A stretch of DNA of 63,743 bases, filler included, from Octopus bimaculoides (lineage: Eukaryota): NCBI RefSeq assembly GCF_001194135.2. It is 5 parts of 5 records of this genome, joined end to end, with 100 filler letters (N's around TTAATTAATTAA, not from the genome) between each part and the next. Parts side by side here need not be neighbours in the genome. Positions count along the whole stretch, not along the records: positions 12,007 to 23,858 come from NC_068985.1; 4 more parts are not named here. The stretch is one strand, 5' to 3'. The position numbers and the translations under genes were made by a program. The notes beneath the pieces are model-generated. The model was not told where the DNA came from. It worked only from the letters and a program-made list of their open reading frames with translations, and made no database searches. Positions 5,801 through 23,973 of the stretch are shown one piece after another. Within the stretch, counting starts at the first letter, position 1, and every line of letters starts with the position of its first letter.

Positions 5801-7240
5801 AGAAAGAAAGAGAGAGAGAGGGAGAAAGAAAGAGAGAGAAAGAGACACCGCAGGAGAGAGACTGAGAGAGGGAAAGAAAGGGAGAGAGTTTGAGAAGCAT
5901 GGATGAGAAGAGAGAAATGGCGAGTGTTATGGGGCAAAAGTAATATAGAGAAGATTAAACAGTTGTAGAAGAGGAAAAAATAGAAACGATAAAGGAAATA
6001 GTGAGAAGGATGAGGAAGAAAAAGAAGAAGAAGAAGAAGAAGAAGAAGAAGGAGGAGGAGGAGGAAGGAGAGGGGGAGAGGAAGTACTAGAGAGAGGAAA
6101 GCAAAGAGATGAGAAAGAGAAGCGGGTGGAAAAGAGAAAAAAATGGGGAGACGAAGCAAAGGAGAGGAGAAAACAAAAGGAATAGATAGAAAGAGTAGTG
6201 TAAAAAAAGATGGGAAGTGAAAGAGTAAAAGTAATGGAGAGAGAGAGGGGGGCGGAGGGAAAGAGAGAGAGGAGACAGAGAGAAAGAGAGAGGGAGACAG
6301 AGAGAAAGAGAGAGGGGATACAGAAAGAAAGAGAGAGGGGAGACAAAGAGAAAGAGAGAGGGGAGACGGAGAGAAAGAGAGAGGGGAGACGGAGAGAAAG
6401 AGAGAGGGGAGACAGAGAGAAAGAGAGAGGGGAGACAGAGAGAAAGAGAGAGGGATACAGAAAGAAAGAGAGAGGGGAGACAGAGAGAAAGAGAGAGGGG
6501 AGACAGAGAGAAGGGAGACAGAGAGAAAGAGAGAGGGGAGGGGGAGAAGCGGAGAGAAAGAGGACTTTTGCTAAAAAGCAAAGGAAGGAGAGATGAAAAC
6601 AGAAAGCCTGTGAGAGGGGAAAAAGAGAGATGCGCGCGCGCGCGCGCACACACACACACGCACACACACGCACACACGCACGCACGCACGCACGCTCCAT
6701 AAATATGGAAAGCAAGGGATGTGAGAAAGTGGGAAGTGACAAAAATAGAATCCAATGATAGATTGGAAAAAAAGGAGAGATTGAATAAGAGAGAGAGACA
6801 AGTATAAAGTAAAGAGTGAAACATTTTGAGACATAGGCATACACATACACACAAAAACGTGTGTATACATACATGCATATGTACCGCGACTGCGTGCGTG
6901 TGCACGCAAACATACACGCACGAATGCAAGCATGCAAAGCATGCAAAGCACGCCCGTAAACGTGCACGCATGCACGCAAATACTCGCACGCAGCCACGCA
7001 GATGAAAAGCTGAAAAGCAAGCAAACGTGCACAGAAGTGAGACAGAGAGGGAGAAAGAGAAAGAGAGGGAGAGGGAGGGGCGGATGGAAGAGAGAGATAG
7101 AGAGGGGTAGAAGAGAGAGAGAGAAAGAGTGAGTGACTGCACGAGCGACAGAGATAAGGGAAAGTGAGACACGCGCGCTCACACGCACACAAGCACAAAC
7201 ACGCACAGACACGCACGCACGTCGGTATACACAGTGGAGA

Positions 7241-7971: not shown

Positions 7972-8392
7972 TAGGTATAAGGCTCGAAATTTTGGGGGGA
8001 GGGGACCTGTCGAATAGATCGACTCTAGTACGTAAGTGGTACTTAATTTATCGATTCCCGAAAGGATGAAAGGCAAAGTCGACCTCGGTGGAATTCGAAC
8101 TCAGAACGTAAAGACTGACAAAATACCGCTAAGCATTTCGTCCGGCGTGCTAATGTTTCTCATTTCTTTACTGCCCACAAGGGGCTACACACAGAGGGGA
8201 CAAACAAGGACAGACAAAGGGATTAAGTCGATTACATCGACTCCCAGTGCTTAACTGGTACTTAATTTATCGACCTCGAAAGGATGAAAAGCAAAGTCGA
8301 CCTCAGCGGTATTCGAACTCAGAACGTAAGGATTGACAAAATACCGCTAAGCATTTCGTCCAGCGTGCTAACGTTTCTGCCAGCTCGCTGCC
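7972..8392 (-). mobile_element. two tandem copies of a tRNA-type SINE (family A; core gcctttcatcctttcggggtcgataaattaagtacc)
   Basis: Two similar units (about 7972-8160 and 8170-8392). B-box-like gagttcgaattcc on the minus strand. Same family at 18205-18410(-), 18737-18950(+), 60818-61025(-), 61158-61360(+). Confidence 0.8.
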
Positions 8393-10374
8393 TTCTCTTT
8401 TTTTTTGTTCATATTGTTGATGTTGATGTTGTTGATGAAGTTATTGTTCTTGATATTGTTATTGTTGTCCTTTGGTTGTTGTTGTTGTTGTTGTTTAGTT
8501 TCACAAAGTTGGCACGGCACTGATCGAGTAGATCTTTGAATCATAGGCGTTCCAACTGAGGCAATCGCATCTTATTTTGAGACGTTGTGTTTCTAGGATT
8601 TTAGTATCTAATGAGATACTTTAAGTCAGTAAGGTGTGATTATAAGGACATTTTTGCCGATGTCTCAAGCAAAGATTATACAAATAATTTATTGTAGGTA
8701 CATGTTGGGGTGCTTGTGTTGTCTAGCTCTGGGGGTCATTTTTGGTCAAAGTAGAACTGTGATCCAAAACATTCCAGCTGTTGACCATTTCGTCACTACC
8801 TCTGCAGTTGATCCAGGAGATTTGAGGGAAATTTGGTTCTTATTTCTAGCATGTCGAAAAATCTCGTAGAGGACCCCTCATTGTTTCATGTTACTTTGGT
8901 GGTTGGCCCTGAACGAGCAGGTCTACAATCAAAAGCGTTTCATCCGTAACTACTCAATTCTTTTTGTATATCTAGGTGTATCCAATGCTGACTTTCGCTC
9001 AGACTGCAGGTGAAATTTTGGGAGGTGGATGAGGGTACATATAGGTGCTATTTCTAGCATTTCGTGTGACCACATAAGCCCCCCCCCCCTCCTCATTGCC
9101 TTGTGGCTGGCTTCAATGTGGTTTCTGGAACTGTTTAGAAATTATAGCTAAATCTCCTCCAAAGCAGACTTTACCGTCTTAGAAAATAAAGGACACCAAT
9201 AATATAGCATATTGACTATTAGTTGTTGTTGCTAATGTTGTTATTCAATCCTAGGTCAGCACTGACCAAGCATATCTTTGATCAAAGCATTCTAACCGTG
9301 ACCATCACTTCTTTTTTCTCATGTGCAGAGAAACCAGAGTAAAATTATCCAGGATCTTTTTCTGAAACAATACGATTTGATTTGATAGAAATTTGGTGAT
9401 AATTTCAAGAAGGTCAAACGATCTCCAAAGAGCGCCCTTGCTGCTGTTGAATCCCTAATTTGGCCTTAATAAAAAAGGGTTATACCGGTTTCCGTCTCTT
9501 CTTTTTAAATATGTAATATATCCAGTTCTATATTATCTTAAATACAAATTGTTTTCTTTGGTAAAGTGCGACTTGAAGGCTATTTGAAGAGGAACCTCTT
9601 AAGAGGCTTCTCTTTAGCTCTTACTCGAGCAGAGCTGACCTGGGAGTATATAACAACTCTTAGTCTGTTCTGATCAAGTAGACCTATGATCAAAGACTTT
9701 TCAGCTATGACTACCTCATCTTATTTTCCTGGCATCGGATCAAAGACTACATCCGTTATCCAATGTGGTCTTGCGCATTTTTAAGGTAAGATTTGAGGGA
9801 CCTTTGACCGCTATTTTTACCTGAGCAAGTGGACACTTAGCAATGTCGTTCACATATCTTTGACTTTTGGCTATTGTTGTTTAGCCCATGCTGTCCATGA
9901 TCCAACAGACCTAACACCAAAGGTATCCCAACAATAACCATCCCATGAAAATACATTTCACGCTCTATTCCCTTTCTTTTTAAAATTTAATTTAATCTTA
10001 ATACTCTAACGTATGATTTAAGAGAAACCCATTTTTAAAAGGTTGAGCGACTATTTAGAGGTTTTCTCATCGAATTCTTGTTTTCTTAGTTTTTTTTTTT
10101 CTTAACCGAAATAGATAAGTTAATTTAGAGCACCGAACCAAATGCATTACAACAGCAAAGTGGTGCCCCAGCTAAGTCAGAGTCCAATGACAGAATCAAG
10201 TAAACGATAAAAGACTTTAAAAAGTTTAATTCATTCTCAGTTCTGAACGATATTGTCTTGTTTTTCATTCCGTTGCGCTTTGAGTTCAAATCTTTGCTGA
10301 GGTGAACTTTACCTTTCAACCTGTTAAAGTCTGCGTGTATGTGTGTGTGTATGTATGTATGTATGTATGTATGT

Positions 10375-10845
10375 GTCTCCTATTTCTTAATTATTATAAA
10401 TCTTCCACTGACGAGAATGCCGGTTTCCAACAAAGATACAAGACTCCATATTTGGGATGTAGTTAACACACACAAATTCAAATTCGGAACTTGAGAAAAG
10501 TCTAGCATATTTTTACTGTTCCACTCACAGATTGCTCTTGTAATGTACGAGCTTGCCGGTCGCTTTCTCTTTCTGAAAATCCCAGTTTATCCAAATTCTC
10601 CTTTAAGTATTTACTAACAAAATCTAGTGCTCCAATTATTATTGGTATGAATATGAATTCATAGACTGGATATAGACTGGTTTCGAAGCTGTTGTCCATA
10701 GATATCCTCTTCTTCATTCATTTTCAAAGAGATATTTCTATCTACAGGACAGCTGACCTCTATGACGACACATACCTTTGCCCCTCTGTCCCAAACAACA
10801 ATATCTGGACTCTTACGTTTACATTTGACAGAAATTTTGATGGGA

Positions 10846-12006: not shown

Positions 12007-12192
12007 ATGTTGCCGTGTGCTCGAACTCTGCAAGAAGTTAAAAACATTTTTTTACTAAAACACAACTGGAACCCTAAGTAAGGCATGTGTAAAATTCGAA
12101 TGAAATTGGTTGCGTAGTTCTCGAGTTTTAGGGATTCACACAGACAGACAGACAGACAGACAGACACACATTCTCATTTTTATATATATAGA
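12007..12192 (-). mobile_element. 5' end of a non-autonomous Helitron (same family as 46765-48203)
   Basis: Minus strand begins A|TCTATATATATAAAAATGAGAATGTGTGTCTG and matches 46765-46960 closely. Runs into a gap. Confidence 0.8.
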
Positions 12193-12480
12193 TGTTTCCT
12201 CTGATGTAACTGTGAAAGAAGAGATGTTGGACTTAATGGCATTAAAAGAAACAATTCGTGGTGTTGACATTAAAAATGCGCTTGACAGAACCTTAATAAA
12301 TGCTGATGTTCAACTGAATAAATTCGTCAGTGTTGCAACAGATGGAGCAGCTGCAATGGTGAGAAAAATGTAGGATTAATTGCACTTATAGAAAATGATC
12401 CCAACTTTCCAGAGTTTCTCTCTGTTCATTGCATTATTCCTCGTGAACACCTGGCAGCCAGATACTTGAAGTATGAAGCA
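12193..12480 (+). mobile_element. hAT (SPIN/GTF2IRD2-like) transposase fragment, decayed
   Basis: EEMLDLMALKETIRGVDI...FVSVATDGAAAMV, then after a frameshift VGLIALI...HCIIPREHLAA, matching the hAT motifs TTDGAPAM and HCxxH. Confidence 0.85.
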
Positions 12481-12729
12481 TCGGTTCGGCAAAGGATATC
12501 GATAGAATTAGTACCAGACTTTAAACAAATAAGTACTGGGGTCGATTCATTCGACCAAAATATTCTTCGAGTCGGTGCCCTTTCATGGCCACAATCTACA
12601 GACTGAAGTTGGTCTGCACGAATGCCCGAGGCCATCTGGCTGAGTTAGGGCCCAAACGGTTTTTATAAGGTGAAAAGTAGGCGAATTTTGATAGCCCAAG
12701 AAGCCGTATCATGCCACAGCTTCACGCTG

Positions 12730-12746
12730 ATTGGTCAATCACGTGA
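12730..12746. promoter_or_regulatory. CCAAT (ATTGG) plus palindromic E-box TCACGTGA pair
   Basis: Motifs at 12730-12734 and 12739-12746. Function not shown. Confidence 0.3.
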
Positions 12747-13038
12747 AACTGCAATGGCTTTTTAATGATCCCTAACTGAATATCTTGTGGTTGGGGTTCG
12801 AATCTCTACACTTTCCTGTTTCTTCTCATAACGTGGTACAACTCCTATATAGCTTTGTTGTCATCAAGGGTCATCGGGACCTGGCTGCTCATTCATGCAG
12901 ACCCTCCACCCCGCCCCACCCAGTCAACCACATGTTACCACCGCGCTCACAATGTAGCATAATGAGAGGAAGGTGGGGGTGGCGATCTGCCTGGGGGATG
13001 CTTTTATGGAGTAGGCACTTTTGGGTTTGTTGTATAAG

Positions 13039-13260
13039 CCTGTCCTTGAGGATTCAAAATAGCCAGTATCTCGTTTAGCATCACAGGTATATGAGAACCT
13101 TTAGTATCTTGTGGTCTCTTTACTTGACACACGTGCTCGGTGGAGCAGAAACGATAATTTGGCAACAGCTTGGAATTCAACGGTCGCTGAAGCCGTAAAC
13201 AAAAGCCTATAACAACAGTTTGATGCATTCTAAAATGATACATAATATTGGAAATGTAAC
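13039..13260 (-). pseudogene. METTL15: inverted partial duplicate of METTL15 exon 1
   Basis: Reverse complement aligns to 13950-14156 with about 8 substitutions and indels of +15, +3 and -3 nt. Encodes ...HIPVMLNEILAILNPQGQ, then unrelated sequence. Donor GTGAG replaced by GCTTAT. Confidence 0.9.
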
Positions 13261-13865
13261 TTGGGGATCCGGCAAATCCATGGGCTGCCCCGGGTGGCAC
13301 ACACTTTAGCTATATCACTGCGTTCACCACTGTATAAACACAAGGAAACATATTTCTTTTCGAACCCAACGGCCTTACGTCCACATCCATGTAGAAACCA
13401 CATTCTCACATATTTTCCCTTTTCTCTCTCCAGATTAATGAAAATGCCTTACTGAATTAATGCTGTTGACCTTACCATTTCGTTCTCGTGCGGAGCTATC
13501 CATAGGGCAGCATACTAGATACACATACTGTAGGAACTCCCATATGTAATACAACGAGTTGAAAAACTGCGATTTACTGCAATTATCTCTGTAATTAGTA
13601 AGATAAAACTCTCTCTTTGAGTGTTTAAAATCGAAACGCAAGAGATGTCAGCTGGTCTAAATTTGGGAGAAATAAAGGGAGATGGGGGATAGTCTCGTAA
13701 AAGCAATGAACGTGTCTTACAGAACTGTATCCTGTCCTTTAAGTGACATGATAATTTGTCTCATTTACTCGCGCAAGAGATTATTCGTCAGTAATAGGGT
13801 AAGAAAATTATATACGAATGGACATCCATACTTATAAATATCGCGCTTTTTAACTATTTTGTAAA

Positions 13866-13924
13866 TTCCGGAAGTTGTTTACAATCTGCTGTTATGGCTT
13901 CTGTTGTAACTTGACATCGTATGT
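13866..13924 (+). promoter_or_regulatory. putative METTL15 proximal promoter/5'UTR: ETS motif CCGGAAGT (13868-13875) and candidate 5'UTR donor C|GTATGT (13919)
   Basis: Motif match about 90 bp upstream of the ATG. ETS sites are typical of housekeeping promoters. Inference only. Confidence 0.4.
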
Positions 13925-13966
13925 CATTCAATTTATATCACTCCTTAATGTTACATTTTCAATATT

Positions 13967-14155
13967 ATGCATCAAACTGTTATAGGCTTTTGTTTACGGC
14001 TTCAGCGACCGTTGAATTTCAAGCTGTTGCCAAATTATCGTTTCTGCTCCACCGAGCACGTGCGTCAAGTAAAGAAACCACAAACTACTAAAGGTTTTCA
14101 TATACCTGTGATGCTAAACGAGATACTGTCTATTTTGAATCCTCAAGAAGGACAG
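13967..14155 (+). CDS. METTL15: METTL15 coding exon 1 (presequence-like N-terminus plus HIPVMLNEIL motif)
   Basis: MHQTVIGFCLRLQRPLNFKLLPNYRFCST...HIPVMLNEILSILNPQEGQ matches the RsmH/METTL15 H-x-PVM motif. Donor CAG|gtgag, phase 0. Confidence 0.9.
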
Positions 14156-15590
14156 GTGAGAATTTTATTAATTTTACGTTACGATGATCACACGGAAATT
14201 GAAATTAACAAGGAAATGAAGGTCAACCGTTGTTTGTGTTTTCTTTATTTTGACTGATTACACGCGAAAACATACTGGCGATCTTGAAGTATAACGTACC
14301 GCTTTCACTTCCACAAAACTAGTTTTCGTTCAGTAATTTATTAGCTTTAATTGTTATTTACAGTCTCTCTCTCTCTCTCTCCCTCTAATATTTGAACATG
14401 ATGGTAGTCGCACATTTTAAAAGGCTATTTCTTTTCCATAAAATAAAGTATTCTGATTTGATTGCAACTTACTCATTTTAGTCTGCTACTAGTTGAACAT
14501 TGTTCCAAACTTTTTCTTAATATATGGCAACAATATTTTTTTCATTTTTGTAAACACTTACTATTAGAGCCTTCTTGATATCATTCATTTGTGAAAACTT
14601 AAAGGAAAGTTAAAGTTTTGGATATTGGAAACGGTGGATTTAAAATTATAGTATTGAATTGTTGTTGTTCAGCCCCTGGCCAACTCCAATCCTGTAGTCC
14701 TTTGATCAAATGCGTTCCAGCTCTGACCTTCTCGCATATTTAGAGTTATCTAGGACTTCATTATTTAATAACCCCTTCTCCCATTTCTTTTTTTAAGAAG
14801 CTGAAGGTGGTTTGGGGTGGGAAAGAGAGCTGGGTGCTATTTCTTGCAAAGAGAAAAACCCACTTAGTGGCCTCTTCAGAGACTATGTATATGTTTACGT
14901 ATGTACATATCATCTTCATCTTTTGACAAAATTATCCTCCATCTGCCGTGGGTGGCTTGACTTAATCTGACAGGTCCGAGGTCTGCTGTCTGCTTTGGTT
15001 TAGTTTCTACAGCTGGAAACCCTTCCTGATACCAACCACTTTACATAGTATACTGGGTGTTTTTTTCCTTATGGTACCAGCACTACTGAGGTTGCATTGC
15101 AAATTGCAAGACTAAGATCCCAAGTTGGGGTACAATAAAGAAGAAAGCAGCACTAAAATATGAAAGAAGGGGCCAGAATATGTTTCTGTAGTGGAGCTAT
15201 ATAGTTATTCACGTTATAGAAGTGAATGGGTACAGAATAGGAACTGTGGGTCGATAAAGGCTGCAAAGGTATGGGAGAGTAAGGGAGGATTAAAGACAGG
15301 GAATGGGTGAGGAATGACTGAAGAACATGGGTTGAAGAGTAATCATTTGTCAAGTGACCGACCAGCCTATCATGTTGTTACCCATTGCTGGTCACAATGT
15401 GCTTTTGCATTGTTTTAGCCTTCAAATGACGCCACCCTGCTGGTTAGGCAAGCAGCCCAACATTCCCACCCTGATTCAAAGGAGGACTGGAGCAATGTGA
15501 AATGAAGTGTTTTGCTCAAGAATGCAACACACCACCCAGTCAGAGAATCGAACCCATGATCATGAGCCTTCAATTATATATATATATATA

Positions 15591-15635
<45 letters not shown>

Positions 15636-15674
15636 GGCATCATCATCATTGTCATTGTCGTCTTCATTTAACAT

Positions 15675-17570
15675 CTGTGTCTCGGAGTGGTTGGCGTTAG
15701 GAAGGGGTTCCAGCTGTAGAAACTCTGCCAAATCAGATTGGAGCCTGGTGTAACCACCTGGTTCACCAGTCCTCAGTCAAATCGTCCAACCCATGCTAGC
15801 ATGGAAAGCGGACGTTAAATGATGATGATGATGATGTTCCATGCTGGCATGGGCTGGACAGTTTGACAGAATCCAACTAACCTGAAGGCTGTGCTAGTCT
15901 CCAGTGTCTGCTTAAGCAAGGTTTCTACAGCTAAATGCCCTTCCTGATGCCAACCACTTTATAGTGTATTGGGTGCTTTTATTATTGCACTACCATTAGT
16001 GGGGGTCACCAAGTGATTCACAAGATGAGACCAGTTCACAGAGTAGGAATACTGTATTGAGTGAGGTGGCTTTGTGCCAAGAATAGTGAGGCTAAAGTAG
16101 GAAAGAGGGATAGGAACAGGGGTCTGGCTGTAGAGGACATACATGGCTACCCCAGCAGGAAAGGGAGAGAAGATGGTGAAGAAGAGATATCAGGTTGTAT
16201 CCTCAAGGTACAAGAAAGTTAATAAAAAGAAAATAGGGGTTAAGAACTGAGGGTGGCTGGTGGGTAGGTAGAAGGATGAGTGAAGTGTCAGAGGGACAGA
16301 AGATGCAGAGACAATAGTCAGGTATTCATTATCATCATTTAGCGTCTGTTGTCCATGCTAGCATGGGTTTGACTGTTTGACCAGGGCTGGTAAGCTGGAA
16401 GACTGCACCAGACTCCAGTCTGATTTGGCATGGTTTCTACAGCTGGATGCTCTTCCTAACACCAACCACTCTGAGAGTGTAATGGGTGTTTTAATATGCC
16501 ACTGGCACAGGTGCCATTTGCGTAACACCGGTATCTGCCATGACTGCGATTTTGCTTGGCTTGATGAGTTTTCTTCTCAAGCACGACAATGCCAAAGGTG
16601 TCAGCCATTGCCTCCATGAGGCTCAACACTTGAAAGGAGTTTTTCATGTGCCACCAGCATCAGCCACTTTGCCTCCATGAGGCTTAATGCTCAAAAGGTG
16701 CTCTTTATGTGCCACGAGCACAGGTGCCACTTACATGACACCAGCATCAGCCACGACTACGATTTCACTTGGCTTGAACAGGTCTTCTCGAGCACAACAT
16801 ATTGCCAAAGGTCTCAGTCACTAGTCATTGCCTCTGTGAAGCCCAAATTTCACCACTCTCAGATATGAGAGGGTGTTCAGGTGGAAATGGACATTTAGTG
16901 TTAAAGGGTAATGTTGGGAGTGCACGATTGGTGGTAAGGTAAGTGGTTCCAAGAAGGCTTACTGGTCTGTTTTCATATAATTACAGCAGCTGAGCCATAG
17001 TGTCATAGTCAGAAGAGTGATGATGGGCTGGGTGTTACAAAGATGTTTGATTAAGAAGGTTTGACAGGTATTTGTTGGGTGCTTGGGAATAGACATTGAT
17101 GATAGGCTTTTAGGACCTCATCATCATCATCATCATTTAGTGTCCATTTTTCATGCTGGCATGGGTTAGATGGTTTGACTGAAACTGGTAAGCTGGAGAG
17201 CTGGAACAGGCTCTAGTCTGATTTTGGCTTGGTTTCTACAGCTGGATGCCCTTACTAATGCCGTAGTAGGTGTCATTTATGTGTCACCAGTATTGTCCAC
17301 ACCTATGATTTCACTTGGCCTGATGGGTCTTCTCAAGTGCAGCAAACAGCCAAGGGTCTTGATCATTTGTCATGGCTTCTGTGAGACCCAGCATTCGAAG
17401 CTCTTGCTTCACCACTTCATCCTATCTCTTCTTGAGTCTACCTCTTCCACAGGTCACCTTCACAGTCAGTGACTGGCACTTCTTGACACAGCTGTCCTCA
17501 TTCATACACATCACATGACTTTACCAATGCAGTCTTCTCTCTTGCACACCACACCTGATGCCTATAATGA
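15675..17570. mobile_element. cluster of RTE LINE 3'-end fragments with (CAT/ATG)n tails (about 15675-15835 +, 16330-16860 -, 17120-17570 -)
   Basis: Shared 3'UTR block gtttctacagctggatgcccttcctaacgccaacc and tail, as in the RTE copy at 22504-23140. Confidence 0.75.
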
Positions 17571-18530
17571 TACCTCGGTTTTGCTAAAATAAACAGGTCT
17601 CTCAAGCACAGCAAATTGCCATTTGAATCTGTTCATTTCACTGGCTGTGTGGTAAGAAGTTTGTTTCCCAACCATGTAGTTTCAGGTTCAGTCCCACTGC
17701 ATGGCACCTTGGGCAAGTGTTTTCTACTATAGCCTAGGGCCGACCAAAACCTTGTGAGTGGATTTGGTAGAGGGAAACTGAAAGAAGCCTGTCGTGTGTG
17801 TGTGTATATATATATATATATATTTTATATACATATGTATTTGTGTATCTGTGTTTGACCTCCCACTGATGTTGGTGTGTTTACGTCCCCATAACTTAGC
17901 AGTTTGGCAAAAGAAACCAATAAAATAAGTACTAGGCTTACAAAGAATAAGTCCTGGGGTAGATTTGTTCAACTAAAGGTGGTGTTCCAGCATGGCCGCA
18001 GTCAAATGACTGAAACAAGTAAAAGAGTAAATAACTCTTTATTTTACCATTTGATTAACTGCATGTGGTTTGGCCCTTTAACCCTTTTGGTAAAACCCAC
18101 CTGAGACTGCCCATTGGTCAATGATACAAACATCCTGTTTTAAAGTGATCTGCCATCAAAAATTCATGTTATTTATGGTCCAAACATTAGATTCATAAGC
18201 TTTTCTGTTATAGGCACAAGGCTTGAAATGTTGGGGAGGAGGCTAGTCAATTACATCGATGTCAATGCTAAGCTGGTACTTATTTCATAGACCCTGAAAG
18301 GATGAAAGGCAAAGTTGACTTCAACAGAATTTGAACTTAGAATGTTAAGAAGGATGAAATACTGCTAAGTACTTTGTCTTGTGTACTAACAATTCTACCA
18401 GCTCACTCCCTCAAACATGAGAGTAAAAATGACTAAATCATTTTACTAAGTTCTTCATTGTATTTAAAAAAAACTCCTGCTTAATTAAATATGCAGCCCA
18501 ATGAGTATTGTAGCAAAATTAGATGTATTA

Positions 18531-19119
18531 ACAAGTATATTCATCCTAGTGTTTTCCTGGAGTCATTACAAGCTCCCATAATTTGTTTGTGGGGAAATCT
18601 AACTGGAACACCTTTTCTTGTACACGACACTTACCCTCTCACCTCTGTTGAGTAGTACTGTGTACAGTCGTTGGAGAATGACATGTATGTGCATGTCTTG
18701 ACCATCATGAAGTCAATCCAGTATCAGTAATGACTAAGGTAGTGAACTGACAGAATCATTTGCACGCTGGGCTAAATGTTTAGTGGAATTTTGTCTGTCT
18801 TTACATTCTGGGTTCAAATTCCACCAAGGTCAGCTTTACTTTCATCCTTTTTCGAGGTCAATAAAATAAATACCAATTGAGCACTGGAGTCGATGTAATT
18901 GGCTTTTCCACTCCCGCAAAACTGCTGGTCTTGTGCCAAAATTTCAAACTGGTATTAGTAATGTCAGTTCATTGAAAAGCAGGTCTGATAAAATAATTGA
19001 GATACTAGAACTGAGGTAAGTGTCGTGTACAAGAAAAAGTGCTCCAGTTAGATTTCCCCACAAACAAGTTATGGGAGCTTGTAATGACTCCAGGAAAACA
19101 CTAGGATGAATATACTTGT
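18531..19119. repeat. 105-bp inverted repeat (arms 18531-18635 and 19015-19119, 3 mismatches, 379-bp spacer)
   Basis: Direct reverse-complement alignment. Arms do not resemble the other repeats in the window. Spacer contains a family A SINE. Confidence 0.92.
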
Positions 19120-19900
19120 AAAGAAGATATGGGGTATGGACAAAGAACTGCAAATAATCTAGATATTTTACAATATGGATTTCAGGAAAATAATCACTTT
19201 TTGTTCAGTAGATGCAAAGGATTAGTAAAGTTGAGAGTGCCTGAATAGATGTGACATGAGACCAGTGAGCCCCAAGTAGTGGAGGCCATTGTTGTTGTAG
19301 TAGCAAAGGAGGGGAGAGAGAGACAGCATGTCTGTGAGCCAGAGAGTGGTGGTGGGGTTTGCAACTTCATATTAATCACTTGTCTGACCTTTTAGTGGAT
19401 GTGGTCAAAGATGATGGAATGTGTAGTACACCATTATGTGTGTCACCTGAGCTTTGTTGAGGGAGCAGTATTTCATTGTTTCATCTGAGCACTGTAGAGG
19501 GTTTGTAGTTGCTGAGAACTAAAGTATTTTCAGGCCCCTGAGAGAAAGGCGAGTTTTTGATATCTAAATAATGAAGTTACACTAAATGTAAAACATCTTG
19601 GTAGTTAGACATAATACATGGAGGTGCATGGCTTAGTGGTTATAATGTTGGACTCGTGATCATAGGATTATGGTTTTGATTCCTGGACTGGACAATGTGT
19701 TTTGTTTTTGAGCAAAACATTTCATTTCACATTGCTTTAGTTCACTCAATTAGCAAAAATTAGTAATATTGATGACTCAGTTACATTTTGTTTTCAGTGA
19801 TCAAATGGATGGATTGTATGACTGAATCAAGCACCAGGGCTGAGAAGTGTAGATGTTGGTCACACTATTAATCCCAGTTGGTTGGGATTGGTTGTTATAG

Positions 19901-20390
19901 GCGCGGGAGTGGCTGTGTGGTAAGTAGCTTGCTTACCAACCACATGGTTCTGGGTTCAGTCCCACTGCGTGGCACCTTGGGCAAGTGTCTTCTACTATAG
20001 CCTCAGGCCGACCAAAGCATTGTAAGTGGATTTGGTAGACGGAAACTGACAGAAGCCTGTCATATATATGTATNNNNNNNNNNNNNNNNNNNNNNNNNNN
20101 NNNNNNNNNNNNNNNNNNNNNNNNNNNNNNNNNNNNNNNNNNNNNNNNNNNNNNNNNNNNTATATGTATGTGTGTGTATATGTTTGTGTGCTTGTCCCCC
20201 CAACATCGCTTGACAACCGATGGTGGTGTGTTTACGTCCCTGTAAGTTAGCGGTTCGGCAAAAGATACCGATAGAATAAGTACTAGGCTTCCAAAGAATA
20301 AGTCCTGGGGTCGATTTGCTCGACTAAAGGCAGTGCTCCAGCATGGCCGCAGTCAAATGACCGAAACAAGTAAAAGAGAGAGAGAGAGTA
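19901..20390 (+). mobile_element. near full-length tRNA-type SINE (family B; ggcgcgggagtggctgtgtggtaag...ccttgggcaagtg...gtaaaagag tail)
   Basis: A/B-box-like head, internal microsatellite, conserved tail. Other copies or fragments at 12480-12610, 17638-18030, 21311-21429(-), 22220-22385(-), 24925-25105, 46375-46440, 54938-55030(-), 57420-57780. Confidence 0.85.
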
Positions 20391-21149
20391 ACCACATTGA
20401 AGAATGATGAGAGATAATAAATAAAGATCAAACGAAAGAATGCAGTATTAATTAACAAGCATATGCATTGACTTTTACAAAATTAAAATTATACTCCTTT
20501 TGCATTACCATAAAAATTGTCAAACAATATTGATACAGGGGTTAATAAATCATGATTTAAAACCATAAACCATGTAGTACACAGCATGAGAAAATCATCA
20601 TACTTCATAGGTATTTGTTTACATACCAAGTAGAAATGTTTACCAGGATGTCAGCAGAATTGACAGAAGATAATTTGATCAGTGCTATCAAATATTTGTA
20701 TTATTGTATTGACACAGGCTGTGTGGTTAAGAAGTTTGCTTCCCAACCACATAGTTTTGGGTTCAATCATACTGTATGGTGCCTGGGCCACCTAAGGCCA
20801 ACCAAACTCAACCAAAAACTGAAAAAAGCCTGTTGTGTATGTGTCCTTGCCATCACACGATAGTTGTGAGTGTCATATAAGCAGTGTCGCTAGAAGGTCA
20901 TCCAGACAAAGAAAATCTGTCTCAACAAATTCCATCTGACCCATGCACGCATGGTAAAGTGGACGTTAAAACAAGGAGGAGGAGGAGGTTTGTCCTGTCA
21001 TGTTACTGCTTTTTTTCTATTCTTGTCAACTCATACTTTATTCTTCTTTTAGTAAAATCTCTTCTTTTTCCCAATCATTATGCAGCACTTGCTGCTAGCT
21101 TTCTTGTGTTTTTCTGCAATTCTTGAATTTGCTTTTACTTTTTTTCTAG

Positions 21150-21289
21150 GTGATTCTTGACATGACCTTTGGTTGTGGAGGCCACAGTCGAGAGATTCTA
21201 CAAAAGGCACCCCAACTGAAAAAATTAATAGTTTTAGATCGCGATCCCTTAGCACATGAAATTGCTTTGGACTTTGCAAACGAATTTAG
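21150..21289 (+). CDS. METTL15: METTL15 coding exon 2 (SAM-binding motif I)
   Basis: VILDMTFGCGGHSREIL...LIVLDRDPLAHEIA matches the RsmH DxTFGxGGH and DRDP motifs. Acceptor ttttttctag, donor AG|gtgaga. 140 nt, phase 0 to 2. Too short for the ORF track. Confidence 0.93.
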
Positions 21290-22179
21290 GTGAGATATTT
21301 TCTTTCTTTTTCTTTAATTTGTTTCGGTCATTTGACTGCGGCCATGCTGGAGCACTGCCTTTAGTCGAGCAAATTGACCCCAGGAATTATTGTTTGTAAG
21401 CCTAGTACTAATTCTATCGGTCTCTTTTGTCAATATTTTGTCAGGGTGTCAATATTTAGCCTGTTTGACATTGGGAAATATCCAGAACAGGAATATGCTT
21501 GAAAATTTGTAATTTGAATTTCTTGGTGTGCAAACAAGAAGAGGTTTCCTCTCTTCTGCTTACACAGTTGACAGATAGAATCAATATTCTGGCCTTTTTG
21601 GCAATACACAAGTTACATTTGCTGCCTATTGCATCTATACTCAACTCGATTGAGAGTTTTCAATCACGTAAGCTTTCAAATGCCAAATGTATTTTGATGA
21701 GGTGGAATTATGCTTATTTTTTTGCCTGAATGAAACATGCTGTCTGAATTGGACCTTGAACAAGTCTTAAGATGAATATATATTTTTTCCTTACTGTCTG
21801 GAGCCTGGTGTTGCCATCCGGTTTCACCAGTCCTCAGTCAAATCGTCCAACCCATGCTAGCATGGAAAGCGAACGTTAAATGATGATGATGATGATGATG
21901 ATATATATATATATATATATATATATTCATTTGTTTTTAAGATAATTTTTCCATGCATTAATTCTTTGAGATATTGTTTTAGAGTCTGATATCCTTCCTG
22001 ATGCTTATCCTCACCTGTAGTTCAAGTAAGGGTTCTTTTATTCTTTACGTCTATAAAAATGCAAAGTCAACAGGTGATTTATTGACAAGGAGAACAACAA
22101 CAGTATAACCATTTGCAGCTCAGTGTTTTTGGGAGAAATGCAAATGTAAGCAAACACACACGCACGTGCACACACGCAT

Positions 22180-22228
<49 letters not shown>

Positions 22229-22503
22229 AGACTTCTTAGTTTTCATTTACTAAATCAACTGACAAGGCTTTGATCAACCTGGAACTGTAGTAGAAAACAC
22301 TTGTCCAAGGTGCCACACAGTGAAACTGAACCCAAAATTACATGATTAGGAAGCAAACTTCTTAATCACAGAACCACGCCTGGAATTATCTACATAAATT
22401 CTTCTTACCCTGCTTTTTTCTTCCAAAAAAACTATCATCATTGTTATAATGTCCTTTAACCTTTTTATTATCATATTTCTGTTGATATATTTGTTTCAAT
22501 TAA

Positions 22504-23140
22504 TCATCATCATCATCGTTTAACGTCCGCTTTCCATGCTAGCATGGGTTGGACGATTTGACTGAGGACTGGTGAAACCGGATGGCAACACCAGGCTCCA
22601 GTCTAATTTGGCAGAGTTTCTACAGCTGGATGCCCTTCCTAACGCCAACCACTCAGAGAGTGTAGTGGGTGCTTTTACGTGTCACCCGCACGAAANNNNN
22701 NNNNNNNNNNNNNNNNNNNNNNNNNNNNNNNNNNNNNNNNNNNNNNNNNNNNNNNNNNNNNNNNNNNNNNNNNNNNNNNNNNNNNNNNNNNNNNNNNNNN
22801 NNNNNNNNNNNNNNNNNNGCATCTCATGTGCCACCCGCACAAGAGCCAGTCCAGGGGCACTGGCAACGATCTCACTTGGCTTGCCGGGTCTTCTCACGCA
22901 CAGCACATTTCCAAAGGTCTCGGTCAGTAGTCATCGCCTCGGTGAGGCCCAATGTACGAAGGTCTTGCCTCACCACCTCAGCCCAGGTCTTCCTGGGCCT
23001 ACCTCTTCCACGGGTTCCCTCAACTGTTAGGGAGTGGCACTTTTTCACGCAGCTATCCTCATCCATTCTCACCACATGTCCATACCAGCGCAATCGTCTC
23101 TCTTGCACACCACAACTGATGCTTCTAATGTGGTGTGCAA
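22504..23140 (-). mobile_element. RTE-clade LINE 3' end (ORF C-terminus, 3'UTR, (ATG)n tail)
   Basis: RRLRWYGHVVRMDEDSCVKK...RGRGRPRKTW is the RTE C-terminal signature. Other 3'UTR copies at 21790-21900(+), 23696-23857(+), 62275-62650(-). Confidence 0.9.
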
Positions 23141-23387
23141 GCACATTAGATTAATGTTGAAAATAATGAAAAATTTAGTAAAAATAACTTTGTTACTATT
23201 ATTAAGCTAATGCTTGGAACAATAACAAGAAAAGCTTAAATTTAGATGACTTTGAAACAGAAAGTTTATATCATAGAACTAAGGTTGGTCTCTGGCAGGT
23301 TGGTATCAAAAGGGTTTATTGAACAAATGAAAAATTAATTACCCTATTTGTTCCACATCATTTCCTTTACATTTTCTGTCTTTCCAG

Positions 23388-23582
23388 CCAGTGTAAGATA
23401 CTCCCTTTGTTAGGAACATTCGAAGATTTGCCACATCTGCTGCAACAACATCAAGTGCCAACAAACTCCATCCATAGTGTTCTTCTTGATGCAGGAACAT
23501 CATCTATGCAATATAGTGCTGCAAATCGAGGCTTTTCTCTCAGTCTCAATGGTAATTTGGATATGAGAATGGATGGATTAAG
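23388..23582 (+). CDS. METTL15: METTL15 coding exon 3
   Basis: LLGTFEDL...VLLDAGTSSMQYSAANRGFSLSLNGNLDMRMDG matches METTL15 DLGxSSMQ...RGFS...PLDMRMD. Acceptor gtctttccag, phase 2 in completes AG+C. Donor AG|gtttgg. Confidence 0.93.
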
Positions 23583-23973
23583 GTTTGGATTAATTTAGCT
23601 TGTATTTTGATGTGTTTCTTCTTTCCAAACATTTATATTCTTGAAACTATTTTGGATATTTTCTAAGATTAGTTTATTTAATTTCTATAGGCAGTACTAC
23701 ACTCTCGGAGTGGTTGACGTTAGGAAGGGCATCCAGCTGTAGAAACTCTGCCAAATCAGATTGGAGCCTGGTGTAGCCATCTGGTTTCACCAGTCCTCTG
23801 TCAAATCGTTCAACCCATGCTAGCATGGAAAGCGGACGTTAAATGATGATGATGATGTNNNNNNNNNNNNNNNNNNNNNNNNNNNNNNNNNNNNNNNNNN
23901 NNTTAATTAATTAANNNNNNNNNNNNNNNNNNNNNNNNNNNNNNNNNNNNNNNNNNNNTATATATGTATATCC

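What the first reader, a model, noticed from the sequence alone, without database searches (positions are those of the whole stretch)
13039..14156. Head-to-head inverted copy of METTL15 exon 1 with reciprocal loss of splice sites
Seen: 13039-13260 is a roughly 96% identical inverted copy of 13950-14156, 689 bp away. All indels (15, 3, 3 nt) keep the frame and all coding substitutions change amino acids. The inverted copy carries an extra TATCATTTTAGAATG, which puts a 3' splice site (ttttag|aATG) right before the start codon, but it lacks the exon-1 donor (homology stops 1 nt past the exon end). The intact copy keeps the donor but lacks those 15 nt, as if deleted between two ATGs. Inference: putting them back creates a 62-nt GTATGT...TTTTAG 5'UTR intron starting at 13919, so the gene copy may have lost an ancestral acceptor. 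It would then need intron retention, which exposes a 56-codon out-of-frame uORF (13921-14091), or a start site downstream of 13924.
Basis: partly seen in the sequence, partly recalled or inferred. Interest (0 to 1): 0.75.

Follow-up and report, generated by a model that had tools for sequence, protein, structure and literature searches.

The report
Inverted relic copy of METTL15 exon 1
In the California two-spot octopus, a replication slip pasted a 216-base backwards copy of the first coding exon of the mitochondrial rRNA methyltransferase gene METTL15 about 700 bases upstream of the gene; the copy is most likely an inert relic, useful mainly because it keeps the older form of the gene's start.

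Summary
Window 13039-13260 (minus sense) and 13950-14156 are a 96.1% identical inverted repeat: 8 substitutions, indels of 15, 3 and 3 nt, and a 689-nt spacer. The window is Octopus bimaculoides chromosome CM046605.1. The + arm is the annotated METTL15 exon 1 (ATG 13967, donor after 14155); exons 2 and 3 follow at 21150 and 23388.

The O. sinensis long-read assembly has an empty site. The copy's two flanks are adjacent there, TTAG stands in place of the copy, and CTGT and AC are shared at the junctions. There is no target-site duplication, poly(A) or exon 2 sequence. The copy is therefore a lineage-specific, microhomology-mediated templated insertion (template switch), not a retrocopy or a misassembled allele.

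Outgroups (O. sinensis, O. vulgaris, Argonauta) carry the 15-nt segment and the extra codon.

The proposed ancestral 5'UTR intron is not supported. GTATGT at 13919 is derived in O. bimaculoides (outgroups have GAATAT or TAATAT), and TTTTAG is read as codons in the O. sinensis and O. vulgaris gene models.

No function is shown. A transcript spanning both arms would form a roughly 200-bp hairpin.

The parts
13039..13260 (-). Inverted relic copy of METTL15 exon 1: 17 nt of 5' leader plus the whole exon-1 coding sequence. It reads MYHFRMHQTVVIGF...LNPQGQ on the minus strand, inside a 79-codon ATG ORF (13243-13004).
   Evidence: absent from the orthologous site in O. sinensis
13040..13043 (.). Left junction microhomology CTGT. 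It is the reverse complement of ACAG at the exon-1 end (14152-14155) and is already present at the empty site in O. sinensis (L001 8648-8651).
13259..13260 (.). Right junction microhomology AC, shared by the end of the copy and the O. sinensis empty site (L001 8656-8657). TTAG (L001 8652-8655) was replaced by the insert.
13229..13243 (-). The 15 nt (ATGTATCATTTTAGA; TTTTAG at 13235-13230) kept by the relic and deleted from the O. bimaculoides gene. Ancestral: present in the O. sinensis, O. vulgaris and, in diverged form, Argonauta genes.
13261..13949 (.). 689-nt spacer. Its right part, from about 13465, is the conserved METTL15 promoter and 5' leader. The CpG observed/expected ratio is about 1.0-1.35 in the 200-nt windows starting 13607-13907 and stays above 1.1 into intron 1 (window starting 14207), against 0.41 for the whole piece.
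13868..13875 (+). ETS-type site CCGGAAGT, conserved in O. sinensis, O. vulgaris and Argonauta; a likely core promoter element (inference).
13895..13915 (+). Short upstream ORF (ATGGCTTCTGTTGTAACTTGA). Its ATG is conserved in O. sinensis and O. vulgaris, and Argonauta has an ATG nearby (ATGCTACTTCT).
13921..14091 (+). 56-codon out-of-frame upstream ORF. Its ATG lies in GTATGT (13919-13924), which is derived in O. bimaculoides.
13950..14156 (+). Source arm: the segment of the gene that was copied.
13967..14155 (+). METTL15 exon 1 coding sequence (63 codons, MHQTVIGF...NPQEGQ), with donor CAG|GTGAGA.
21150..21289 (+). METTL15 exon 2 (VILDMTFGCGGHS...ANEF).
23388..23582 (+). METTL15 exon 3 (SQCKILPLL...DMRMDGLR). 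Present in isoform X1 and skipped in X2.

Best explanation
A single DNA-level template switch (or equivalent microhomology-mediated templated repair) occurred in the O. bimaculoides lineage after it split from the O. sinensis/O. vulgaris lineage. It copied 13950-14155 of the METTL15 gene in reverse complement into a site about 700 nt upstream, replacing 4 nt (TTAG).

In the four-point description, the nascent strand left its template at ...AAG(A/C)CTGT and re-annealed through CTGT/ACAG at the end of exon 1. It copied back to 17 nt upstream of the ancestral first ATG, then returned through AC to ...TTGGGG.

The product is an inert pseudo-exon. It has no donor, no exon 2 and no promoter of its own, and it has drifted (4 substitutions and a 1-codon deletion in the conserved P-x4-hydrophobic spacing).

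The functional exon then changed as well: a 15-nt deletion between the ATG(T/C)ATCA repeats, loss of one GTT, and C33R, N39T and S44F. The relic therefore preserves the ancestral N-terminus (MYHFR..., TVV, C33, S44).

Shown: the repeat, the empty site, the junctions, and the polarity of the differences. Inferred: the mechanism and the lack of function.
For: 1) The repeat is real and sharply bounded.

2) O. sinensis, a gap-free chromosome assembly, is collinear on both sides. Window 12603-13043 matches L001 8234-8651 and window 13259-13362 matches L001 8656-8761. The copy itself matches only the O. sinensis exon 1, in reverse (L001 10199-9984, 94.9%).

3) The empty site reads GTATAAGA-CTGT-TTAG-AC-TTGGGGG. 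O. bimaculoides reads GTATAAGC-CTGT-[copy]-AC-TTGGGGA. That gives microhomologies of 4 and 2 nt, no target-site duplication and no filler DNA.

4) O. vulgaris has a single exon-1 match on both strands of 42 kb.

5) Both O. bimaculoides arms share C at 14144 (CAA, Q). O. sinensis, O. vulgaris and Argonauta have A (K). This places the duplication after the lineage split.

6) With outgroups, the derived states divide evenly. Gene arm: 13959, 14063, 14085, 14097 plus deletions of 15 and 3 nt. Relic: 14019, 14076, 14084, 14129 plus a 3-nt deletion.

7) The arms differ by K2P 0.040, against 0.063-0.095 for O. bimaculoides versus O. sinensis non-coding DNA around them. The event is therefore roughly half as old as the species split.

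8) The relic lacks one residue of the NP-x-x-G/x-Q spacing that every METTL15 homologue examined keeps.

9) The four-point template-switch model describes exactly this outcome: the 1->4 fragment is replaced by the reverse complement of a nearby 2->3 fragment, creating inverted repeats flanked by dissimilar sequence (PMC5453318).
Against: [quoted passage not shown] The mechanism is inferred from the junctions only.

The empty site comes from one species. The orthologous upstream segment was not found in the 42 kb fetched for O. vulgaris.

The O. bimaculoides structure rests on one short-read-based assembly; no independent contig could be retrieved.

Lack of function is an absence-of-evidence argument. 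All three indels keep the frame and the relic retains an open 79-codon ORF, although two of the indels are triplet-repeat slippage and the numbers are small.

The breakpoint lying at the exon-intron boundary remains a coincidence that microhomology only partly explains.
Confidence: 0.78

Rival explanations
1. First reader's model. The ancestral gene had a 62-nt 5'UTR intron (GTATGT at 13919 to TTTTAG just before the ATG). The gene lost the acceptor through the 15-nt deletion and must now retain the intron or start transcription downstream.
For: The 15 nt are indeed ancestral and were deleted from the gene. A TTTAG just upstream of ATGCAT is conserved as far as Argonauta.
Against: The donor hexamer is absent from all outgroups: GAATAT in O. 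sinensis and O. vulgaris, TAATAT in Argonauta. The O. sinensis and O. vulgaris gene models read TTTTAG as codons. The one annotated upstream-exon isoform appears to use another acceptor, CTTCAG|CGACC. TTTTAG is expected by chance about once per 1-2 kb at this base composition (inference).
Confidence: 0.04
2. The inverted repeat is functional. A transcript that spans both arms (for example from an upstream alternative first exon, as annotated in O. vulgaris) folds into a roughly 200-bp double-stranded RNA. That RNA would feed ADAR editing or endogenous RNAi acting on METTL15, or it would mask the exon-1 start and internal acceptor.
For: The predicted fold of 13020-14175 pairs the arms over about 200 bp, MFE -487.6 kcal/mol. 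Hairpin RNA loci born by inverted duplication of their target genes are known in Drosophila (PMC10292708, PMC10317233). Template switching is a documented source of RNA hairpins (PMC8794818). O. vulgaris has an annotated first exon 13.7 kb upstream of exon 1.
Against: There is no evidence of any transcript covering both arms. The O. vulgaris upstream exon was not found in the fetched O. bimaculoides or O. sinensis flanks. The relic is lineage-specific and has drifted as fast as expected for neutral DNA. Rfam found nothing.
Confidence: 0.07
3. Assembly artefact: a misplaced allele or a chimeric join in the short-read O. bimaculoides assembly.
For: The assembly is scaffolded short-read data with estimated gaps in the same piece (N runs at 20074-20160 and 22696-22818). 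No independent O. bimaculoides contig was found.
Against: There is no gap between or next to the arms. Homology is confined to 207 nt with unique, O. sinensis-collinear sequence on both sides. The copy differs from the gene by 4% and three indels, and it carries ancestral states (15 nt, GTT, C33, S44) that the gene lacks. An allele or a chimeric read of the same gene would not do this. The junctions show microhomology at a defined empty site.
Confidence: 0.05
4. RNA-mediated copy. Exon 1 RNA (from the start site to the donor) was reverse-transcribed and inserted, which would explain why homology stops at the exon boundary.
For: Homology ends within 1 nt of the exon-1 donor.
Against: There is no exon 2 sequence after the boundary, no poly(A) and no target-site duplication. 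The terminal ACAG is explained by CTGT at the target site. The copy starts at 13950, some 75 nt downstream of the conserved ETS promoter site at 13868-13875, rather than next to it. The source lies only 0.7 kb away, as expected for a local replication error.
Confidence: 0.03
5. The inverted copy is ancestral to Octopus and was precisely deleted in O. sinensis.
For: Only one empty site is available, and O. vulgaris lacks the whole upstream segment.
Against: Both O. bimaculoides arms share the derived C at 14144 against O. sinensis, O. vulgaris and Argonauta. Arm divergence (0.040) is about half the species divergence. A deletion that removes exactly the exon-derived sequence is unlikely.
Confidence: 0.03

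Closest known systems
Template-switch mutations under the four-point model, and FoSTeS/MMBIR-type templated insertions (Loytynoja & Goldman 2017, PMC5453318; Monttinen & Loytynoja 2022, PMC8794818)
   Same: A nearby segment is copied in reverse complement and replaces a few bases at the exit and return points. There is microhomology at the switch points and no target-site duplication. The result is an inverted repeat flanked by dissimilar sequence that can fold into a hairpin.
   Different: About 216 nt copied over a 0.7-1.1 kb jump, much longer than the events of tens of bp catalogued in primates. The copied segment is almost exactly a first coding exon.
Hairpin-RNA and proto-miRNA loci born by inverted duplication of their target gene (Drosophila hpRNAs, PMC10292708 and PMC10317233; plant young miRNAs, from my own knowledge of Allen et al. 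2004)
   Same: Inverted arms derived from a protein-coding exon, long near-perfect complementarity, evolutionarily young.
   Different: One arm here is the gene's own exon 1 and the loop is its promoter. No transcript across both arms and no small RNAs are known. Membership is untested.
Partial gene duplicates / pseudo-exons (unprocessed pseudogene fragments)
   Same: A fragment of a gene copied at the DNA level, lacking promoter and splice partner, drifting at about the neutral rate.
   Different: Very small (a single exon), inverted, and within 700 nt of its source, rather than part of a segmental duplication.
Processed retrocopies
   Same: The copy boundary coincides with an exon boundary.
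   Different: No poly(A), no target-site duplication, no downstream exons. Tested here and not met.

Membership tests
METTL15 / RsmH (Pfam Methyltransf_5) gene, exon 1 | The + arm is part of a protein that matches the family model. | tested here: met
   Exon 1 plus exon 2 is 100% identical to XP_014773881.1. Isoform X1 (P0271) hits PF01795 at E = 8.5e-80. The exon-1 peptide alone hits only METTL15 chains in the PDB, weakly (E = 0.12), and no Pfam model.
METTL15 / RsmH (Pfam Methyltransf_5) gene, exon 1 | Conserved H-x-P-V-M/L ... L-x-P-x4-hydrophobic-(I/L)-D-x-T-F-G spacing. | tested here: met
   The gene arm reads HIPVMLNEILSILNPQEGQ|VILDMTFG, with the same spacing as all homologues inspected. 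The inverted copy has NPQGQ, one residue short, so it fails this feature.
Template-switch (four-point) inverted insertion | The inserted fragment is the reverse complement of a nearby sequence. | tested here: met
   13039-13260 is the reverse complement of 13950-14156, 689 nt away.
Template-switch (four-point) inverted insertion | The ancestral state lacks the insert, and a short 1->4 fragment is replaced. | tested here: met
   O. sinensis empty site: the flanks are adjacent and TTAG stands in place of the insert.
Template-switch (four-point) inverted insertion | Microhomology at the switch points, no target-site duplication, no filler DNA. | tested here: met
   CTGT (4 nt) and AC (2 nt); no duplication of flanking bases.
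Template-switch (four-point) inverted insertion | Short range (tens of bp), as in the catalogued events. | tested here: not met
   216 nt copied over a 0.7-1.1 kb jump. This lies in the range usually discussed under FoSTeS/MMBIR rather than short template-switch mutations (PMC5453318).
Processed retrocopy | Spliced downstream exons, poly(A) tail, target-site duplication. | tested here: not met
   After the exon-1 end the copy continues into sequence collinear with the O. sinensis flank. There is no exon 2 match, no A-run and no duplication.
Hairpin-RNA (hpRNA) / inverted-duplication small-RNA locus | Two inverted arms homologous to a target gene that can pair. | tested here: met
   A stem of about 200 bp in the predicted fold, MFE -487.6 kcal/mol.
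Hairpin-RNA (hpRNA) / inverted-duplication small-RNA locus | Both arms lie on one transcript, and Dicer-sized small RNAs or ADAR editing arise from the stem. | not testable with these tools
   No expression data were reachable. The O. vulgaris upstream exon was not found in the O. bimaculoides flank held.
   GAATAT in O. sinensis and O. vulgaris, TAATAT in Argonauta.
   TTTTAG is present in the outgroup genes but lies inside their annotated coding sequence. It is absent from the O. bimaculoides gene. No RNA-seq junction data are available.
Haplotype / allele misassembly | The copy adjoins an assembly gap, homology extends into the flanks, and divergence is at allelic level. | tested here: not met
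   No N run between 12007 and 20073. Homology is confined to 207 nt. Divergence is 4% plus three indels, and the copy carries ancestral states.

The most novel reading that the evidence does not exclude
The 207-bp inverted repeat that brackets the METTL15 promoter is used in one of two ways. (a) Transcripts starting upstream of 13039 carry both arms and fold into a long double-stranded RNA. That RNA would direct ADAR editing, or endogenous RNAi would tune METTL15; this would be a cis hairpin-RNA locus whose second arm is the target gene's own first exon. (b) Recombination between the arms flips the promoter-bearing spacer, a eukaryotic analogue of bacterial invertible promoter switches, which would be seen as an inversion polymorphism.
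Probability: 0.05. Interest if true: 0.6.

Novelty: new member of a known kind. Interest (0 to 1): 0.3.

Why it matters
This is a clean, datable example of a large (about 216 nt) templated inverted insertion in an animal genome. The empty site, both microhomology junctions and the source sequence are all visible. It extends the size range in which template switching can be recognised and shows that the process can copy a whole coding exon.

The relic also acts as a molecular fossil. Independently of the outgroups, it shows that the O. bimaculoides METTL15 presequence has since lost six codons and changed three residues. That is useful for anyone annotating the start codon or studying mitochondrial targeting of this enzyme.

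Practically, the second exon-1 copy and the potential hairpin are a trap for read mapping, primer design and variant or RNA-editing calls at this locus. None of this changes what is known about METTL15 function.

Tried and rejected
1) A protein word-index search with exon 1 plus exon 2 found nothing. The exhaustive representative search was needed to identify the gene.

2) Exact-product look-ups of the read-through ORFs of both arms, in three versions, found no independent contigs. Isoform X2 is not on record.

3) Pfam on the 63- and 79-aa exon peptides gave no hit.

4) Rfam and tRNA scans of the piece found nothing.

5) I looked for residual palindromy or extended homology that would indicate a larger, older inverted duplication. 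There is none.

6) I looked for the empty site in O. vulgaris. That upstream segment is absent from the 42 kb fetched.

7) I looked for the O. vulgaris upstream alternative first exon in the O. bimaculoides and O. sinensis flanks. It was not found within the 6-10 kb held.

8) I tested whether the mutation cluster at 13908-13940, which created GTATGT, is itself a short template switch. There is no reverse-complement source of 9 nt or more within about 1 kb in either species.

9) Selection on the copy, inferred from 'all substitutions non-synonymous, all indels in frame', is rejected as evidence. P = 0.17 for the substitutions. Two of the three indels are slippage in the triplet repeats GTTGTT and AAGAAG, and the third lies between ATG(T/C)ATCA repeats.

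10) I suspected a hAT-type transposase fragment at 12190-12500 from memory, but Pfam gave no hit. It remains an unverified lead.

11) TATAAATA at 13833-13840 looked like a TATA box. It sits in a 6-nt O. bimaculoides-specific insertion, so I do not rely on it.
Full report
**1. The observation**

The piece (window 12007-23858) holds an inverted repeat. The repeat finder reports it as arms 13045-13214 and 13978-14147, 170 nt without gaps and 96% complementary. With gaps it extends to 13039-13260 and 13950-14156.
- There are 204 aligned positions with 8 substitutions (96.1% identity).
- The inverted copy carries 15 nt that the gene arm lacks (ATGTATCATTTTAGA, 13243-13229).
- The inverted copy carries one extra GTT (within GTTGTT, 13216-13211).
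- The inverted copy lacks one AAG/GAA (gene arm AAGAAG, 14143-14148).

The spacer is 689 nt. A blastn with word size 7 finds no further similarity between the left half and anything to the right, apart from dispersed SINE-like repeats. Both ends of the homology are therefore sharp.

**2. What the + arm is**

An exhaustive HMMER search with exon 1 joined to the exon I found at 21150 gave a 100% match over all 110 residues to a 313-aa protein. The collection names it XP_014773881.1, 'probable methyltransferase-like protein 15 homolog isoform X2 [Octopus bimaculoides]'.

The longest isoform (XP_014773880.1) matches Pfam Methyltransf_5 (the MraW/RsmH family) at E = 8.5e-80. The locus fetched for it, CM046605.1:18652925-18686496 of GCA_001194135.2, is base-for-base the window (window position = L004 position + 7966).

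Gene structure within the piece:
- Exon 1 coding sequence is 13967-14155, with donor CAG|GTGAGA.
- Exon 2 is 21150-21289 and exon 3 is 23388-23582.
- The only N runs are at 20074-20160 and 22696-22818, far from the repeat.

**3. Relatives and the empty site**

The same protein cluster led to O. sinensis, O. vulgaris and Argonauta hians METTL15 and to their genomic loci. In O. sinensis (L001, no Ns) the region is collinear with the window on both sides of the copy:

| Window (O. bimaculoides) | O. sinensis (L001) | Note |
|---|---|---|
| 12603-13043 | 8234-8651 | left flank |
| 13259-13362 | 8656-8761 | right flank |
| 13421-14735 | 9223-10796 | promoter and exon 1 |
| 13045-13260 (the copy) | 10199-9984 | only match, reversed, 94.9%; this is O. 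sinensis exon 1 |

The two species read as follows at the site:
- O. sinensis: GTATAAGA-CTGT-TTAG-AC-TTGGGGGTCC
- O. bimaculoides: GTATAAGC-CTGT-[CCTTGAGG...GGAAATGTA]-AC-TTGGGGATCC

The insert therefore consists of exon-derived sequence only, and it replaces TTAG. Its ends overlap the target by CTGT (the reverse complement of ACAG, the last four bases of exon 1) and by AC. There is no target-site duplication, no poly(A) and no exon 2 sequence.

The last bases are junction microhomology, and the G/C at 14156/13039 may simply be a flank base.

O. vulgaris has one exon-1 match on both strands of 42 kb. Its orthologue of the insertion site is not in the fetched sequence, so the empty site rests on O. 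sinensis alone.

**4. Mechanism of origin (inferred)**

The pattern is what the four-point template-switch model predicts: the 1->4 fragment is replaced by the reverse complement of a nearby 2->3 fragment, giving an inverted repeat flanked by dissimilar sequence (PMC5453318). The order here is 1-4-3-2:
- Point 1 lies at 13043/13044.
- Point 4 lies at 13259-13261.
- Point 3 lies at about 13950.
- Point 2 lies at 14151-14155.

The copied length (about 216 nt) and the jump (0.7-1.1 kb) exceed the short events that paper targets. They fall in the territory usually described as FoSTeS/MMBIR or microhomology-mediated templated repair. I did not observe the mechanism; I infer it from the junctions.

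A retrocopy is excluded by the missing hallmarks. A misassembled allele is made very unlikely by several points: the absence of gaps, the 207-nt limit of homology, the collinear unique flanks, and the fact that the copy carries ancestral character states that the gene lacks.

**5. Polarity of the differences**

A five-way alignment (O. bimaculoides gene arm, O. bimaculoides copy, O. sinensis, O. vulgaris, Argonauta) assigns the changes as follows.

| Lineage | Substitutions | Indels |
|---|---|---|
| Gene arm (derived) | 13959 T; 14063 C (C33R); 14085 C (N39T); 14097 T (S44F) | 15-nt deletion; loss of one GTT/CTT codon |
| Inverted copy (derived) | 14019 (F18S); 14076 (K36R); 14084 (N39D); 14129 (S55A) | loss of GAA |

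- The GAA loss in the copy shortens the NP-x4 spacing that every METTL15 homologue inspected keeps.
- Both arms share C at 14144 (Q59), where O. sinensis, O. vulgaris and Argonauta have A (K). The copy was therefore made after the O. bimaculoides lineage had separated.
- K2P distance between the arms is 0.040. O. bimaculoides versus O. sinensis non-coding DNA around the locus gives 0.063-0.095. The event is roughly half as old as the species split (inference, small numbers).
- The outgroup proteins start MYNFRMHQTLVIG (O. sinensis) and MYHFRMHQTLVIG (O. vulgaris). The relic reads MYHFRMHQTVVIG and the gene reads MHQTVIG.

The flanking near-repeats ATGTATCA and ATGCATCA make slippage a simple cause.

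**6. The proposed ancestral intron**

The donor-like GTATGT at 13919, and with it the ATG at 13921 that opens the 56-codon upstream ORF, is GAATAT in O. sinensis and O. vulgaris and TAATAT in Argonauta. It is thus a novelty of O. bimaculoides, the one genome that lacks TTTTAG in the gene.

In O. sinensis and O. vulgaris the gene models read TTTTAG as the codons TTT AGA. In Argonauta the homologous TTTAG is the stop of a 4-codon upstream ORF, and the protein starts at the conserved ATGCAT.

The only upstream-exon isoform on record is O. vulgaris CAI9722835.1, which begins M|RPLDFK. Compared with the DNA, it appears to join an ATG|GTAAGT exon 13.7 kb upstream to the acceptor GGCTTCAG|CGACC inside exon 1, not to TTTTAG.

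I therefore rate the intron hypothesis as not supported. Whether the derived uATG at 13921 matters depends on the transcription start, which cannot be seen here. The conserved ETS site CCGGAAGT (13868-13875), a second inverted ETS-like site and a CpG-rich domain suggest a start near 13880-13900. The CpG observed/expected ratio is 1.0-1.6 in the 200-nt windows starting 13607-14207, against 0.41 for the whole piece. The uATG has a poor context (C at -3, T at +4) compared with A at -3 for 13967, so leaky scanning is a sufficient explanation (inference).

**7. Is the copy doing anything?**

The seven coding differences between the arms are all non-synonymous, but with 22% synonymous sites that has P = 0.17. 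Two of the three in-frame indels are slippage in triplet repeats. Nothing here demonstrates selection.

The relic has no donor and no conserved promoter of its own. No gene is called upstream of METTL15 in the 6 kb of O. bimaculoides flank held. It has accumulated as many changes as the gene arm.

A CCAAT plus TATAAAA pair on the minus strand at 12736-12660 looked like a promoter. In O. sinensis the CCAAT is CCTAT and the region is only 86% identical.

The one physical consequence that can be stated is this: any RNA spanning both arms would fold into a stem of about 200 bp (MFE -487.6 kcal/mol for 13020-14175). That is the architecture of hairpin-RNA loci born from inverted duplication of their targets (PMC10292708, PMC10317233) and of hairpins made by template switching (PMC8794818). 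Without expression data it remains a possibility, which I put at about 5-7%.

**8. Verdict**

- The feature is real, and its origin can be explained with unusual completeness.
- It is a new member of a known kind, a template-switch or microhomology-mediated inverted partial gene duplication. It is of modest general interest, with some value as a worked example, as a fossil of the ancestral METTL15 N-terminus and as an annotation and mapping caveat.

Noticed in passing
window 13908-13940 (versus L001 9937-9975 and L002 about 5945-5975): A dense cluster of O. bimaculoides-specific changes in the 5' leader: a 3-nt and a 1-nt deletion plus about 5 substitutions within 30 nt. It creates GTATGT and the uATG at 13921. 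No reverse-complement source of 9 nt or more lies nearby, so it is not an obvious second template switch.
   Followed up: partly
window 13895-13915; L001 about 9925; L002 about 5933: An upstream ATG (ATGGCTTCTG...) is conserved in O. bimaculoides, O. sinensis and O. vulgaris, giving 6- and 9-codon upstream ORFs. Argonauta has an ATG nearby (ATGCTACTTCT...). This may be a conserved regulatory upstream ORF in the METTL15 leader.
   Followed up: partly
window 13788/13789 versus L001 9592-9822 and L003: O. sinensis and O. vulgaris share a 231-nt block that O. bimaculoides lacks, bounded by GTCAGTAAT(G/A)G direct repeats. It is either a deletion in O. bimaculoides or an insertion in the other lineage, inside the otherwise highly conserved promoter.
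   Followed up: no
L003 5980-6009 and L003 about 19750: O. vulgaris has an annotated alternative first exon (ATG|GTAAGT) 13.7 kb upstream. From the protein (M|RPLDFK) it appears to splice into an acceptor inside exon 1 (GGCTTCAG|CGACC), giving an isoform without most of the presequence. The same acceptor sequence is present in both O. bimaculoides arms.
   Followed up: partly
window 23388-23582: Exon 3 (SQCKILPLL...DMRMDGLR, part of the SAM-binding fold) is skipped in the annotated isoform X2 (XP_014773881.1) and in O. sinensis X3. Isoform X3 of O. bimaculoides starts at the M of DMTFG in exon 2. Several predicted isoforms would lack catalytic or targeting parts.
   Followed up: no
window 12660-12736 and 12909-12917, minus strand: A GC box (GGGGCGGGG), CCAAT (GACCAATCA) and TATAAAAA in promoter-like order just beyond the relic. 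The CCAAT is not conserved in O. sinensis (CCTAT), and O. bimaculoides has a 13-nt insertion next to it. Probably old repeat or neutral sequence.
   Followed up: partly
window 12190-12500, + strand: A frameshifted ORF (...NKFVSVATDGAAAM / GEKNVGLIALIENDPNFPEFLSVHCIIPREHLAA...) that from memory resembles a hAT-type transposase fragment. Pfam gave no hit, so this is unverified.
   Followed up: partly
window 14987-23857 (e.g. 15680-15833, 21799-21894, 22505-22666, 23696-23857; 17642-18027 versus 19910-20378): Introns 1 and 2 are packed with several families of SINE-like dispersed repeats in both orientations (77-96% identical), some ending in (ATG)n/(TGA)n or (TA)n tracts. One family also occurs at 12482-12559 and repeatedly in the O. 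sinensis locus.
   Followed up: no
window 13833-13840: TATAAATA lies in a 6-nt insertion specific to O. bimaculoides (O. sinensis and O. vulgaris read CATACT------TATCGCG). It is either a newly gained TATA-like element or chance.
   Followed up: no
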